A stretch of 64,000 nucleotides of DNA. It comes from Haplodiscus bocki (Eukaryota). Numbering within the stretch: position 1 is the first letter of the stretch; every line of letters begins with the position of its first letter. This document shows, one piece after another, positions 25,301-27,838 of this stretch. The position numbers were made by a program, and so were the translations under genes. Location of the stretch: contig OZ296650.1 in the NCBI GenBank assembly GCA_965655095.1, positions 71,362,001 through 71,426,000 on the forward strand. The letters are read 5' to 3'. The notes beneath the pieces were generated by a model. It did no database searches. It saw only the letters and a list, made by a program, of their open reading frames with translations, and was not told the DNA's origin.

Positions 25301-27491
25301 GCAAAAAGAAGAACTCTGAATTTCTAATCTAATTTCTATTCATTTGTAGCTATTCTTAAGCTACCTGCGACAGAGCTTCTTGTATGATCTCTCTGGCTTT
25401 TCTGAGCTCTTCGCGAATGCTTCCAGAGTTGGCCAGCAACTCTTGATCACTACTGTCATTACCAGCTCCGTTTTCTCCATTCCCCGCACGAGTTTCCCTT
25501 CTCCACTGCTTCTTGCCAGACCCACGCTCACTGGCACTCGAGTAATCACGTTGGTTGTCTCTCTTCAGCGGTGTTGATTGATTTTTGGGAGCAAATGCTT
25601 CAGCACCACAAACGCTTCTATCATTATGTCTGCTGCCATTTTTAGAAGCCTTTGGCCTTGAGCCAGAATTATTCAAATTTCTCTACAAAACACGAATGGC
25701 GTGAGTGGTAAAATTGTTTATTTAGATGATTTCATGCTTTGGTCATTCATAGGCATGCAGGATCTGAATTGTTGCACAGAGCACAACGAAAGTCGTGATC
25801 AGAAGAGGAATTACAGAAACAGAAAAAGGAGAAAAGCCAAAACACGATGATGGAAAGATGCACATGCCAGAAACAAACAACTAAGGAGACACTTTATAAA
25901 AAACAACAGACCTCAAGATCAATTTGACTAGATAATCGTTTCCAGTACAAAGATTCGCGCAGCTGTGAATCCAGTTGTTTTAACCACACGCTGCTGACGT
26001 CTGCCAAAACAACTGAGCCAACTACACGCGTATTATTTTCTGAACGCTTATCAGGTGCTGTGGTTTCCTGTTACAACAATGCAGAAATTAGGAGTCTTTC
26101 AGAATTGATACTATGATTGTAATACTCTGCAATTAACCTTTTGAGAGGAAACCAATTTTGGTGATTCACTTTGCGATTTACGTGTATTTTTGATTGTTTT
26201 CGTTGGAGATTCATCATAGGTGCAAGAAGGGGGCCTTGCACCATTAATATTTGAAAGCTTGAGAAAGTAATTGCTCTCTTCTTCAGCAAATTTAAGCCGG
26301 TTGAAGTTACAGTTGCATCTAAATGCCTCGACGTCCACTCTTAAACAATTTAGAGGTTCCCTCTCCACAGTCTCATCTTTATCAAACGTCTTTGCTTCAC
26401 AGACTTGCTTGGCAACTGGGTATTTTTCTTCCTACAATGAATAACATCAAACTTGAACCTTCATTTATGCACCAACGAAGATTATCAAAAAAAGGAAGTT
26501 TGACAGATTGGACGGGAAAGAACCGATATAGCTACCACAGCTTTACCTTGGGCTTAGCTTCAATTTCATTGACGTCTAGAAGTGAGCCAACAGTGGCCGG
26601 ATCAAATTTTAACTGCTTTTTGGGAGTAGCAGTTTCAGAAATGAGAAACGTTGATTCGTCAGCACTGAAGCTCAATTGATCCATCCAAACAGATTTCGCC
26701 AGGTTACACAGAATGTCCTGAAATTTTGAGCTTCATGAGAACATAATCGTCAAAAAAAAAGAACAAGTAACTCTGAGACATGCTTCTACAAGTCTACACC
26801 AAGCGAAACGCACACTGAACTATGGACTAAAGTAGTGCCAAATGAAACTTTTGATAGTGCTGACATCAATGAATGGTGGTTTTCTCAAGCGTTATAAATG
26901 AGCTGGATAAAATGACATCAGATCGTAAGAAAACCACGCATAATACAGATAAAGGAAAGAAAGATCATGCATTCGTTATTCAAGACTTTCTACCTTGTTT
27001 ATTCCAGAAAAATTCAAGGCAGCTTCCTTGCCCGGAATATAAGATTCGCTTTGATCATCCCGAAGAGCAAATTCTTTGTCTGAGACTCCATTTTTCACTT
27101 TCAGATTAATGCTTGCTTTCCATGCATTCACTGTTTCGGGTTTAATGTTATCGTCACTTGGGACAAGGATATCCGTTTCGAACGCTATATCTTTCTCTTT
27201 CTCTTCTTCAAATTTCCCAACTTCATTAGATGATTCTTCGGATGGATGCGATTGTTTTTGGGTCGACAGTTCTTGCAAGCTAGGGCTTGGCCTTACAGTA
27301 TTTGACGAGGTGGCCTGCTTGTTCAAACTCTCACTTGTTACAGATTTGGGAATGGAAGTTGCGCTAGAGACGGCTTCTGTGTCCACGCTATTTGCATTTT
27401 GCTTGGCTGATTTCTGCTTGTTCTGCGGCTTTCTCTTACTAACGCCCTGCTGATTTTGGTTCCCTCCACTTTTTGGCTTCTTCCGAGCCAT
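1..27491 (-). CDS. AARS1: Alanyl-tRNA synthetase with long eEF1B-delta-like N-terminal extension; 21 coding exons, ~1494 codons in window, 3' end runs off the window
   Basis: Minus-strand exons: 27491-26994, 26717-26547, 26431-26138, 26067-25912, 25682-25365, 22862-22796, 22717-22637, 22309-21978, 19789-19452, 18953-18809, 18736-18334, 11069-10945, 9179-9035, 8790-8498, 8159-7902, 7760-7624, 7173-7065, 6581-6456, 6115-5912, 1504-1406, 184-1. All 20 introns are GT..AG with matching phases and no in-frame stop. Confidence 0.75.
1406..1504 (-). CDS. AARS1: AlaRS exon (C-Ala)
   Basis: ttgcag/gttaat boundaries, 33 codons TLNRAAQ...CMFFVPK, phase 0-0. Confidence 0.8.
4050..4100 (-). repeat. tRNA-derived repeat fragment
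   Basis: B-box AGTTCGAATCC on the minus strand in an intron; no full cloverleaf. Confidence 0.4.
5912..6115 (-). CDS. AARS1: AlaRS exon (C-Ala helical region)
   Basis: ttttag/gtgggt boundaries, 68 codons [14 protein letters not shown]...STDDK. Confidence 0.85.
6456..6581 (-). CDS. AARS1: AlaRS exon
   Basis: ttttag/gtgagg boundaries, 42 codons [16 protein letters not shown]...ALKQ. Confidence 0.85.
7065..7173 (-). CDS. AARS1: AlaRS exon (editing domain end)
   Basis: [31 protein letters not shown]; tttaag acceptor, gttagc donor. Confidence 0.92.
7274..7556. mobile_element. CATG-rich MITE-like element
   Basis: Perfect 9-bp terminal inverted repeat ACCGGGTTG/CAACCCGGT enclosing many CATG/GATCATG words. 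Confidence 0.7.
7624..7760 (-). CDS. AARS1: AlaRS exon (editing domain)
   Basis: [20 protein letters not shown]...SVEFCGGT; gtaagt donor. Confidence 0.95.
7902..8159 (-). CDS. AARS1: AlaRS exon (editing domain, HxxxH)
   Basis: [21 protein letters not shown]...[15 protein letters not shown]. Confidence 0.95.
8498..8790 (-). CDS. AARS1: AlaRS exon
   Basis: [21 protein letters not shown]...GYVLHVG. Confidence 0.95.
9035..9179 (-). CDS. AARS1: AlaRS exon
   Basis: [40 protein letters not shown]; phase 0-1. Confidence 0.9.
10945..11069 (-). CDS. AARS1: AlaRS exon
   Basis: [31 protein letters not shown]; gtgagt donor. Confidence 0.95.
18334..18736 (-). CDS. AARS1: AlaRS exon
   Basis: [42 protein letters not shown]. 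Confidence 0.96.
18809..18953 (-). CDS. AARS1: AlaRS exon (motif 3)
   Basis: [34 protein letters not shown]. Confidence 0.96.
19452..19789 (-). CDS. AARS1: AlaRS exon
   Basis: [12 protein letters not shown]...[22 protein letters not shown]...[11 protein letters not shown]. Confidence 0.96.
20150..21640 (-). mobile_element. 5'-truncated decayed LINE RT fragment in an AARS intron
   Basis: [14 protein letters not shown]...[40 protein letters not shown] at ~20835-20850, [11 protein letters not shown]. Confidence 0.88.
21978..22309 (-). CDS. AARS1: AlaRS exon (motifs 1 and 2)
   Basis: [13 protein letters not shown]...[15 protein letters not shown]...[18 protein letters not shown]; phase-1 acceptor, with no in-frame ATG upstream before a stop. 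Confidence 0.96.
22637..22862 (-). CDS. Two exons (22862-22796, 22717-22637) encoding an eEF1B-delta-like leucine zipper joined in frame to AlaRS
   Basis: [22 protein letters not shown]|[27 protein letters not shown]. Heptad pattern aligns by eye to EEF1D [36 protein letters not shown]. tttcag acceptors and gtgagt donors. Confidence 0.85.
23371..23432 (-). repeat. tRNA-derived SINE-like sequence
   Basis: A-box TGGTCTAGTGGT and B-box GGTTCGAAACC; imperfect anticodon arm with 8-nt loop. Confidence 0.6.
25365..27491 (-). CDS. Five phase-0 exons encoding an eEF1B-delta-long-like N-terminal region (basic start, low complexity, repeated W-D-F-E motifs, ARE-IQ helix)
   Basis: MARKKPK...; [17 protein letters not shown]; [17 protein letters not shown]; [17 protein letters not shown]; [19 protein letters not shown] (cf. 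EEF1D VILRDIARARENIQKSLAG). Exon lengths 498, 171, 294, 156, 318 nt, all multiples of 3. Confidence 0.75.
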
Positions 27492-27706
27492 TTACGCTGA
27501 CGTGTTATATAAAATGTATATATCCCAGTGTTTCTTTTGCGATAGAGGCTTCTTCAATTCTGGAAAATCAGGAACTTGATACTGATTGCACAAGAAAACT
27601 TATTAACCTTCCACTATTACCAATTCATAGCTGTTCCAAATTAGGCAGTCCAACTTTAATTTCTTACAAGAGATAAAACTCCTTTAATTAGACATTTTGT
27701 ACTAAC

Positions 27707-27838
27707 AGTGTTGCTGTTCTTGCACGAAGTAAAGCCAAGAGGCAAATAAAACGAAGATTCAGCACTATCGTATTTTAATTTGTCAATCCAACATGTTTCC
27801 AGATCACTCTTGAATAAGTAGAAGTCTTCAACTGTCAT
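27707..27838 (-). CDS. Putative alternative first coding exon (or uORF) carrying the best-conserved eEF1B-delta N-terminal motif
   Basis: cttttag|ATCCA ATG, then MTVEDFYLFKSDLETCWIDKLKYDSAESSFY... (cf. EEF1D EKIWFDKFKYDDAERRFY). Phase-0 donors gttagt after 27707 or gtaaga after 27668. Confidence 0.65.

What the first reader, a model, noticed from the sequence alone, without database searches (positions are those of the whole stretch)
25912..27838. Four copies of the eEF1B-delta N-terminal motif, one per symmetric phase-0 exon
Seen: TCWIDKLKYDSAESSFY (27838-27707), [17 protein letters not shown] (26717-26547), [17 protein letters not shown] (26431-26138) and [17 protein letters not shown] (26067-25912). 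Each sits in its own exon, and all junctions are phase 0, so any subset can be skipped in frame. Established: the long vertebrate EEF1D isoform also carries extra copies of this motif. Inference: a splice-tunable multivalent docking array for GST-like domains.
Basis: partly seen in the sequence, partly recalled or inferred. Interest (0 to 1): 0.7.

Follow-up and report, generated by a model that had tools for sequence, protein, structure and literature searches.

The report
Elongation-factor docking motifs on alanyl-tRNA synthetase
Four conserved copies of the short helix that elongation factor 1B-delta uses to grip its partner gamma sit in four consecutive exons, but here they belong to a delta-like head spliced onto alanyl-tRNA synthetase, which suggests a new way of tying a tRNA-charging enzyme to the elongation machinery.

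Summary
On the minus strand, four consecutive GT-AG, phase-0 exons (27838-27707, 26717-26547, 26431-26138, 26067-25912) each hold one copy of the eEF1B-delta N-terminal helix. This is the peptide crystallised on the eEF1B-gamma GST-like domain (PDB 5JPO).

- **Chance test.** A matrix built only from 62 vertebrate long-EEF1D copies ranks the four sites 1-4 of 36,097 six-frame windows. Only copy 1 scores positive (29.5 bits); copies 2-4 are degenerate.
- **Selection.** In a related species with saturated synonymous sites, the 68 core codons are 78% identical (dN/dS about 0.07), against 40% for the linkers. A third species has six copies, two per exon.
- **Gene identity.** The gene is not EEF1D: I found no acidic-region or exchange-domain exons in the window or in the relatives' loci examined. 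The array runs into a delta-type helix and leucine zipper (z about 8 against vertebrate delta). It then continues in frame, in all three species, into an apparently complete alanyl-tRNA synthetase.
- **Alternative start.** A conserved alternative first exon (27491-26994) has its own ATG and would replace copy 1.

Best reading: a delta-derived, multivalent docking head ties a long AlaRS isoform to eEF1B. Splice tuning is untested, because no RNA data exist. This scan had already flagged the same stretch as a delta-AlaRS fusion (s1-369308).

The parts
27707..27838 (-). Exon E1: start codon plus motif copy 1 (core 27796-27746, TCWIDKLKYDSAESSFY). This is the canonical delta-type gamma-binding helix.
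   Evidence: ATG at 27838 and a phase-0 GTTAGT donor. Hits 5jpo_E. Scores 29.5 bits, rank 1 of 36,097. Conserved in L001 and L007.
26994..27491 (-). Ealt: alternative first coding exon with its own ATG and a basic, NLS-like N-terminus (MARKKPKSG...). Its phase-0 donor joins E2 and so bypasses copy 1.
   Evidence: An in-frame stop lies directly upstream in the window. The ATG and first 16 residues are conserved through synonymous changes. Differences by codon position are 62/51/90, with dN 0.45 against a saturated dS. Homologous ORFs are present in L001 and L007.
26547..26717 (-). Exon E2 with motif copy 2 (core 26693-26643, [17 protein letters not shown]).
   Evidence: 171 nt, phase 0-0. Rank 2 of 36,097. 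78% identical to L001 over 40 residues.
26138..26431 (-). Exon E3 with motif copy 3 (core 26314-26264, [17 protein letters not shown]). This is the most degenerate copy, with N at the tryptophan position.
   Evidence: 294 nt, phase 0-0. Rank 4 of 36,097. The core is 14/17 identical in L001, while the exon as a whole is 38% identical.
25912..26067 (-). Exon E4 with motif copy 4 (core 25992-25942, [17 protein letters not shown]).
   Evidence: 156 nt, phase 0-0. Rank 3 of 36,097. The core is 15/17 identical in L001. The intron upstream of E4 contains an in-frame stop, so it has to be spliced out.
25365..25682 (-). Exon E5: low-complexity linker ending in a delta-type helix (..[18 protein letters not shown]).
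   Evidence: 318 nt, phase 0-0. Its tail aligns to the vertebrate delta ARENIQKSL helix. The 30 nt upstream of its acceptor are 27/30 identical to L001.
22796..22862 (-). Exon E6: first half of the delta-type leucine zipper. It shifts the phase from 0 to 1.
   Evidence: 67 nt here and in L001, 76 nt in L007, always phase 0 to 1. It lies within the colinear alignment to the vertebrate delta zipper.
22637..22717 (-). Exon E7: second half of the zipper ([21 protein letters not shown]), followed in the same frame by ATG AAA AAC, which sits at the usual position of the AlaRS start.
   Evidence: 81 nt in all three species. E6+E7 differences by codon position are 6/7/21 and dN/dS is 0.12. z is about 8 against the vertebrate delta zipper, with 0 of 500 shuffles reaching the score.
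21978..22309 (-). First AlaRS catalytic exon, joined in frame to E7.
   Evidence: Pfam PF01411 profile positions 1-99, E 2.2e-51. The spliced reading is open. 96% identical in L001 and 90% in L007.
2..19789 (-). Remaining AlaRS exons, which run off the window start.
   Evidence: PF01411 profile positions 100-550 appear in colinear exons, and DHHA1 matches at 184-2.

Best explanation
The four motifs are real paralogous copies of the eEF1B-delta N-terminal helix, and selection maintains them.

They form the front of a roughly 406-residue delta-derived head. In order, the head consists of the motif array, a delta-type ARE-IQ helix and a delta-type leucine zipper. The head ends where delta's linker, acidic region and exchange domain would follow. 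At that point it continues in frame into the start codon and the AlaRS exons, which match the family profile from position 1 through the C-terminal DHHA1 domain.

Proposed mechanism (inferred):
- The degenerate copies 2-4 add weaker or differently specific contacts with further GST-like domains.
- The zipper oligomerises, alone or with genuine delta.
- Together these place AlaRS inside the eEF1B complex next to eEF1A, much as ValRS is held there in deuterostomes.

Isoform choice most plausibly works through alternative first exons: E1 with copy 1, Ealt with a basic N-terminus, and probably a short canonical AlaRS starting at the ATG in E7. Skipping of single motif exons is possible in frame, but nothing shows that it happens.

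Shown here: the motifs, the exon structure, purifying selection, homology to delta up to the zipper, the absence of exchange-domain exons, and in-frame continuity with AlaRS in three species.

Inferred: expression of the fused form, binding to gamma, multivalency, and isoform regulation.
For: - **Motif identity:** 5jpo_E hit. EEF1G-binding domain at aa 1-43 of EEF1D (PMC13231004). 5JPO is delta residues 1-32 on the gamma GST-like domain, and the zipper trimerises (PMC9458455).
- **Not chance:** the four sites rank 1-4 of 36,097 with a matrix built from vertebrate copies only.
- **Selection:** cores are 78% identical with dN/dS about 0.065; linkers are 40% identical with dN/dS about 0.41; dS is saturated; p = 8e-8.
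- **Gene model:** tblastx between the window and L001 finds conserved blocks only at the nine predicted exons, apart from a few short blocks of about 22-25 bits. Splice sites and phases are the same in both.
- **Third species:** the same order is predicted, with six copies and an open spliced reading frame into AlaRS.
- **Delta homology of E5 tail-E6-E7:** colinear alignment to vertebrate delta, z about 8, with 0 of 500 shuffles reaching the score.
- **Coding upstream of the AlaRS ATG:** E6+E7 differences by codon position are 6/7/21.
- **No acidic region or exchange domain:**
- **AlaRS exons colinear across the profile:**
- **Precedent:** ValRS is tied to eEF1B through delta (PMC4394549).
Against: - No RNA or protein evidence for any junction. 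No RNA run holds the stretch and the reads laid were DNA contigs.
- Copies 2-4 score at or below 0 bits against the vertebrate model, and ordinary HMM scoring does not detect them. They lack several consensus residues (K+3, Y+6, D+7, A+9), and copy 3 also lacks the tryptophan.
- The zipper frame and the AlaRS ATG share one exon. Their being in frame is therefore one event with a prior of 1/3, inherited by all three species, not three independent confirmations.
- Short-read contigs break at a repeat at 23285-23478, between E5 and E6. Contiguity there rests on the assembly and on synteny in two other species.
- I could not check whether a canonical EEF1D exists elsewhere in this genome.
Confidence: 0.55

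Rival explanations
1. There are two overlapping genes and no fusion protein. A truncated delta-like protein (array plus zipper, no exchange domain) ends just after E7 by intron retention or polyadenylation. Ordinary AlaRS is made from a promoter in front of E7, using the ATG in E7. The truncated protein would act as a decoy or adaptor for eEF1B-gamma.
For: The ATG in E7 lies where AlaRS normally starts and is conserved in three species. The in-frame relation has a 1/3 prior. No RNA data exist.
Against: The only donor after the zipper is the one that feeds the AlaRS exon. The read-through tails after E7 differ in sequence and length between species (13, 34 and 23 codons), so there is no conserved C-terminus. 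No conserved block that could serve as a terminal exon lies between E7 and the AlaRS exon.
Confidence: 0.15
2. Only copy 1 is a gamma-docking site. Copies 2-4 are diverged repeats kept for another purpose: different partners such as other GST-like domains of synthetase-complex proteins, contacts within the molecule, or a helical scaffold. The array would then not be a multivalent gamma binder.
For: Copies 2-4 score at or below 0 bits on the vertebrate matrix and are missed by local HMM scoring. Lineage-specific conserved residues (SVW..QL, ES at +10/+11) differ from the vertebrate consensus.
Against: They keep the register and the residues shared by all copies: W at position 0 except in copy 3, L at +4, E at +10, and an aromatic at +13/+14. 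They are the best matches in the whole window after copy 1. Vertebrate long delta also keeps divergent position-specific copies.
Confidence: 0.3
3. The head works like the vertebrate long delta isoform, in the nucleus rather than in translation. The basic Ealt N-terminus would be a nuclear localisation signal, and the array plus zipper would mediate transcription-related contacts, giving AlaRS a moonlighting role.
For: Vertebrate eEF1B-delta-L combines the same kind of array with a basic NLS and acts as a heat-shock transcription factor (PMC4346937). Ealt starts with two basic clusters and is conserved.
Against: There is no positional orthology between these copies and vertebrate copies A-F. 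The NLS is only a resemblance, and nothing here bears on localisation.
Confidence: 0.12
4. The similarities arise by chance in non-coding or decaying sequence, and the exons are pseudo-exons.
For: Taken singly, copies 3 and 4 score no better than the best background windows in a simple BLOSUM scan.
Against: Ranks 1-4 with an independent matrix. Strong purifying selection and conserved splice sites and phases in three species. Single-copy read depth.
Confidence: 0.01

Closest known systems
eEF1B-delta (EEF1D), N-terminal half: gamma-binding helix (PDB 5JPO chain E), ARENIQ helix and leucine zipper
   Same: Copy 1 matches the crystallised peptide. The order of motif, helix and zipper is colinear with vertebrate delta, and the homology ends at the end of the zipper.
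   Different: There is no central acidic region and no EF1_GNE exchange domain in the window or in the relatives' loci. Alanyl-tRNA synthetase follows instead. There are four motif copies rather than one.
Vertebrate long EEF1D isoform (eEF1B-delta-L)
   Same: It has an array of repeated delta N-terminal motifs next to a basic segment, upstream of the zipper. Bird and fish proteins show six position-specific copies.
   Different: From general knowledge, the five extra vertebrate copies lie in one large alternative exon and are followed by canonical delta with its exchange domain. Here each copy has its own exon, the array is attached to AlaRS, and no one-to-one orthology of copies was detected.
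ValRS-eEF1B (eEF1H) complex of deuterostomes
   Same: It works alike: a tRNA synthetase is held on the eEF1B exchange complex through the delta/GST-like interaction system (PMC4394549).
   Different: ValRS carries the GST-like receptor side and binds delta. Here the synthetase would carry the delta-like ligand side plus delta's zipper. The enzyme is AlaRS, for which I found no report of such an appendage.
Other proteins carrying the motif (P0009, a MATH/TRAF-domain protein from an unidentified Logan contig)
   Same: Two tandem copies score 17.5 and 17.4 bits on the vertebrate model, upstream of a coiled-coil-like region. This shows the motif is portable.
   Different: The C-terminal domain is unrelated (PF21355). 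The organism is unknown and there is no synthetase.

Membership tests
eEF1B-delta (EEF1D) | N-terminal eEF1B-gamma-binding helix (W-x-D-K-x-K-Y-D-x-A-E-x-x-F-Y) | tested here: met
   Copy 1 hits 5jpo_E, scores 25.6 bits in the HMM and 29.5 bits on the matrix built from vertebrate copies.
eEF1B-delta (EEF1D) | ARENIQ-type helix and leucine zipper downstream of the motif | tested here: met
   Colinear local alignment of the E5 tail, E6 and E7 with four vertebrate delta proteins. z is 5.8-8.8 for the window (4.0-8.4 for L001), and 0 of 500 shuffles reach the window's score.
eEF1B-delta (EEF1D) | Central acidic region (PF10587) | tested here: not met
   No Pfam hit in the exons. tblastn with vertebrate delta C-termini finds nothing in the window or L001.
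eEF1B-delta (EEF1D) | Guanine-nucleotide exchange domain (PF00736, EF1_GNE) | tested here: not met
   No hallmark pattern in six frames. No tblastn hit in the 64 kb window or the 20.5 kb L001. No extra conserved block above about 25 bits between the loci. Other parts of the genome were not searched.
Long-EEF1D-type motif array | Two or more further copies of the motif recognisable with a model built from vertebrate copies | tested here: inconclusive
   Copies 2-4 rank 2-4 of 36,097 windows, but at -0.6, -7.5 and -12.8 bits. The local HMM gives about 0 bits or no hit. Their conservation argues that they are real.
Long-EEF1D-type motif array | Positional orthology with vertebrate copies A-F | tested here: not met
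   Class-specific matrices give no consistent best class for copies 2-4 in either species.
Alanyl-tRNA synthetase (class II) | tRNA-synt_2c catalytic/tRNA-binding region and C-terminal DHHA1 domain in colinear exons | tested here: met
   PF01411 profile positions 1-99, 100-208, 208-258, 255-387, 383-424 and 460-550 lie in successive exons; DHHA1 lies at the window start.
Alanyl-tRNA synthetase with appended N-terminal domain (fusion protein) | Continuous reading frame from the appendage into the synthetase | tested here: met
   The spliced reading frame is open in the window, L001 and L007, with identical phases. This rests on sequence only.
Alanyl-tRNA synthetase with appended N-terminal domain (fusion protein) | A transcript or protein that contains both parts | not testable with these tools
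   No RNA run holds the stretch. The profile search of 1.84 billion cluster representatives returned no transcript-derived protein carrying the array.
Alternatively spliced cassette exons | Symmetric exons whose skipping keeps the frame | tested here: met
   E2-E5 are 171, 294, 156 and 318 nt here and 156, 279, 165 and 321 nt in L001. The predicted L007 exons are 108, 303, 417 and 264 nt.
Alternatively spliced cassette exons | Observed inclusion and skipping isoforms | not testable with these tools
   No RNA data. The only indirect hint is that intron ends are unusually conserved around the E4/E5 junction.

The most novel reading that the evidence does not exclude
A long isoform of alanyl-tRNA synthetase is a stable subunit of the eEF1B complex in this animal lineage. 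It would be held there by a head copied from eEF1B-delta: several gamma-docking helices plus delta's own zipper, which could co-trimerise with genuine delta. This would be a second, independently evolved synthetase-eEF1B channelling complex besides ValRS-eEF1H. Its valency would be set by motif copy number (four to six among relatives) and by the choice of first exon. The motif array with a basic segment would then be an old, portable module rather than a feature of mammals and birds only.
Probability: 0.35. Interest if true: 0.8.

Novelty: new variant of a known kind. Interest (0 to 1): 0.64.

Why it matters
Which synthetases are wired physically to the elongation factors, and why, is an old question about tRNA channelling. 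ValRS in deuterostomes is the textbook case.

A synthetase that carries delta's docking helices and zipper would show that the same interface can be used from the opposite side and for another amino acid. It also gives a simple set of peptides, conserved across three species but graded in their match to the consensus, for asking what the eEF1B-gamma GST-like domain recognises.

The same analysis shows that vertebrate long EEF1D holds six position-specific copies of the gamma-binding helix, in fish as well as birds. The review I read does not mention this, and it bears on how that isoform works.

Tried and rejected
- **RNA evidence.** The run search returned four holders of one study, none recorded as RNA. 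Laying two of them showed genomic contigs, single-copy depth over the exons, and contig breaks at a repeat at 23285-23478.
- **Pfam on exons E1-E5 and Ealt.** No family was found, so the motif has no Pfam model.
- **DNA-level repeats among the four exons.** None beyond short chance matches, so the duplications are old.
- **Simple BLOSUM scan against the human peptide and copy 1.** Copies 3 and 4 scored only at the level of the top background windows. I replaced this scan with the vertebrate-derived matrix.
- **Searches for more relatives.** The Ealt profile and the neighbouring zf-HIT gene found only the window itself and L001. The third species came from an AlaRS exon search.
- **Exchange-domain exons as alternative 3' exons of one locus.** Rejected.
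- **One-to-one orthology with vertebrate copies A-F.** Not supported.
- **Ealt as an in-frame cassette after E1.** Rejected for the window. A stop codon lies directly before its ATG, and the nearest upstream AG would put it out of frame.
- **AlphaFold2 of the two-motif exon of the third species, single sequence.** Mean pLDDT was 46, so the model is uninformative.
- **Literature.** I found no report of an AlaRS-delta fusion. The 2015 review of the long delta isoform contains no occurrence of 'repeat'.
- **Organism.** I could not identify it. Other agents' notes say 'probably coral', which I did not test.
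Full report
**Observation.** I read the region on the minus strand and listed all stop-free stretches.
- Each lies in an open stretch closely bracketed by a polypyrimidine-AG acceptor and a GT donor.
- The exons are 27838-27707 (132 nt, beginning with ATG), 26717-26547 (171 nt), 26431-26138 (294 nt) and 26067-25912 (156 nt).
- All are multiples of three with phase-0 junctions, as is the next exon, 25682-25365 (318 nt).
- The 70-nt intron between the third and fourth exon holds an in-frame stop, so it must be removed.

**Is it the delta motif, and is it more than chance?**
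- Exon 1 searched against all solved structures hits one chain only: 5jpo_E, the 32-residue N-terminal peptide of human elongation factor 1-delta (E 0.019).
[quoted passage not shown] PMC13231004 maps the EEF1G-binding domain to residues 1-43 of EEF1D.
- Pfam has no model for the motif.
- A simple BLOSUM scan left copies 3 and 4 at the level of the best background windows, so I needed an independent model.
- I aligned the four 32-residue segments (A1) and searched 1.84 billion cluster representatives with the profile.
- Of 16 hits, 12 are vertebrate-type long EEF1D proteins. Sources name two of them EF1D of a bird and eEF1 delta b of a fish. They carry EF1_GNE and the acidic region and match 2N51 and 5JPO.
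- Each long EEF1D holds up to six position-specific copies of the motif.
- From 62 of those vertebrate instances alone I built a 25-column model.
- With ordinary local HMM scoring only copy 1 is significant (25.6 bits). Copies 2 and 4 get about 0 bits and copy 3 is not reported.
- Scored without gaps over every stop-free 25-mer in all six frames, the four sites rank 1, 2, 3 and 4 of 36,097. The scores are 29.5, -0.6, -7.5 and -12.8 bits, and the next window scores -21.9.
- So copy 1 is a bona fide delta helix. Copies 2-4 are degenerate relatives of it, not accidents. Copy 3 has asparagine where the tryptophan should be.

**Comparative evidence.** One profile hit, P0001, was an ORF from a genomic contig of a related organism. 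Its locus, L001, is syntenic: the same zf-HIT gene lies upstream, followed by every exon in the same order.
- Splice sites and phases are the same. The array exons are 132, 156, 279, 165 and 321 nt, again all multiples of three.
- Synonymous sites are saturated (dS 0.9 to above 2).
- The 68 codons of the four 17-residue cores are 78% identical, with dN/dS about 0.065.
- The other 173 aligned codons of exons 1-4 are 40% identical, with dN/dS about 0.41. Fisher p = 8e-8.
- The two most degenerate copies, 3 and 4, are 14/17 and 15/17 identical.
- tblastx between the loci finds conserved blocks at the nine predicted exons. Elsewhere it finds only a few short blocks of about 22-25 bits.

A third, more distant species was reached through an AlaRS exon search (loci L004 and L007).
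- It has the same order of parts but six motif copies. An extra pair resembles copies 3 and 4.
- The pairs appear to lie two to an exon (303 and 417 nt).
- 'One motif per exon' is therefore a feature of two of the three species. Symmetric phase-0 exons hold in all three.

**What gene is this?** It is not EEF1D.
- No exchange-domain hallmark occurs in any frame of the window.
- tblastn with the C-terminal 330 residues of three vertebrate delta proteins finds nothing but copy 1 in the window or in L001.
- After exon 5, which ends in a helix like delta's ARENIQKSL segment, come two short exons. These are 22862-22796 (67 nt, phase 0 to 1) and 22717-22637 (81 nt, phase 1 to 1).
- The tail of exon 5 and these two exons align colinearly with the vertebrate delta helix and the whole leucine zipper up to its final LEKS. 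For the window z is 5.8-8.8, and 0 of 500 shuffles reach the score.
- Two codons after the end of the zipper, in the same exon and frame, lies ATG AAA AAC. The exon then splices in frame to 22309-21978, which matches the AlaRS catalytic domain from profile position 1 (spliced reading).
- The remaining AlaRS exons are colinear down to the window start.
- The stretch upstream of that ATG is coding. Differences from L001 fall 6/7/21 by codon position, and dN/dS is 0.12.
- The same phases and an open reading frame into AlaRS are predicted in all three species. Exon 6 differs in length by nine bases in the third species, which keeps the phase.
- The head is therefore homologous to the N-terminal half of delta, cut at the end of the zipper, and placed on AlaRS exons that match the family profile from position 1 through DHHA1.

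**Isoforms.**
- Between exons 1 and 2 lies a 166-codon exon (27491-26994). It has its own ATG, a stop codon directly upstream in the window, and a phase-0 donor.
- Its first 16 residues, a basic segment, are conserved through synonymous changes. The exon shows a coding pattern of substitution (62/51/90 by codon position).
- It most likely serves as an alternative first coding exon that replaces copy 1.
- The conserved ATG in exon 7 could start an ordinary short AlaRS.
- No RNA run holds the stretch and the reads laid were genomic contigs. None of these isoforms, nor any exon skipping, could be checked.
- Intron ends are at background similarity to L001 (9-14 of 30 bases), except downstream of exon 4 (20/30) and upstream of exon 5 (27/30). 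This is a weak hint of regulated splicing at that junction.

**Mechanism.** My best reading is that a long AlaRS isoform is tethered to the eEF1B complex.
- Copy 1 would bind the gamma GST-like domain.
- The diverged copies would give further contacts, to the same domain or to other GST-like domains.
- The zipper would oligomerise, possibly with delta itself, which trimerises through this zipper (PMC9458455).
- The functional analogue is ValRS. In deuterostomes it joins eEF1B by binding delta through its own GST-like domain (PMC4394549). Here the synthetase would carry the opposite side of the interface.
- Binding, multivalency and expression of the fusion are all inferred.
- The main rivals are a separate truncated delta-like protein overlapping a normal AlaRS gene, a different role for copies 2-4, and a nuclear role like that of vertebrate long delta.

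**Comparison and novelty.**
- The closest known things are the N-terminal half of eEF1B-delta and the motif array of vertebrate long EEF1D.
- The locus fails two defining features of EEF1D: the acidic region and the exchange domain.
- I found no positional orthology between these copies and the six vertebrate copies.
- I found no report of an AlaRS with such an appendage.
- I found no annotated or transcript-derived protein with this array among the cluster representatives.
- I rate it a new variant of a known kind: a known docking motif and zipper in a new architecture.
- This scan had already noted the apparent fusion on the same stretch (s1-369308) and the missing exchange-domain exons (s1-369476). 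My tests agree with both.

**Limits.**
- The organism is unidentified. Other agents' notes say 'probably coral', which I did not test.
- Short-read contigs break at a repeat between exons 5 and 6. Linkage there rests on the assembly and on synteny in two other species.
- A single-sequence AlphaFold2 model of a two-motif exon was too uncertain to use.

Noticed in passing
P0002-P0008, P0011-P0015 (vertebrate proteins): Long EEF1D proteins of birds and fish carry up to six position-specific copies (A-F) of the gamma-binding helix. The 2015 review (PMC4346937) says the long form is restricted to mammals and birds and does not mention repeats. A fish protein named eEF1 delta b (XP_051785162.1) has all six.
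   Followed up: partly
P0009 (713 aa, Logan contig of 2,494 nt): An unrelated protein has two good copies of the motif (17.5 and 17.4 bits on the vertebrate model), followed by a long coiled-coil-like region and a C-terminal TRAF/MATH domain. The motif seems to be a portable module.
   Followed up: partly
P0016 (343 aa, JGI metagenome): Four tandem copies of WSNQLSFxSPESDF lie in front of a PAS domain. The pattern is strikingly like copy 2 ([14 protein letters not shown]). Whether this reflects homology or convergence is open.
   Followed up: no
L007:11335-11637 and L007:11912-12328: The third species has six motif copies. An extra pair resembling copies 3 and 4 is present, and each pair seems to lie in a single exon, so the intron between exons 3 and 4 is absent there.
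   Followed up: partly
window 25683-25911 (intron between E4 and E5): The intron ends are unusually conserved with L001: 20/30 bases after the E4 donor and 27/30 before the E5 acceptor, against 9-14/30 at the other introns. The third species does not share this at the E5 acceptor.
   Followed up: partly
window 31691-32725 (-): An intronless zf-HIT gene (345 aa, PF04438) lies directly upstream. It is syntenic in L001 (57% identity), where only about 265 nt separate it from the E1 start codon.
   Followed up: partly
window 28404-29838: A tandem array of units of about 118 bp lies between the zf-HIT gene and E1. L001 has only about 265 nt between the zf-HIT gene and E1, so there is no room for such an array there.
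   Followed up: partly
window 23285-23478: A short repeat with about 20-fold read depth lies in the intron between E5 and E6. Short-read contigs break here.
   Followed up: no
window 20064-21631 (-) and 34762-38536 (+): Reverse-transcriptase-like open frames lie inside the first AlaRS intron, with no Pfam hit for the two pieces tested. A gag-pol retroelement (RVT_1) lies upstream of the zf-HIT gene.
   Followed up: partly
window 26185: A polymorphism in one run (X4) changes codon 83 of exon 3 from ACA (Thr) to TCA (Ser). It falls in a linker, not in a motif core.
   Followed up: yes
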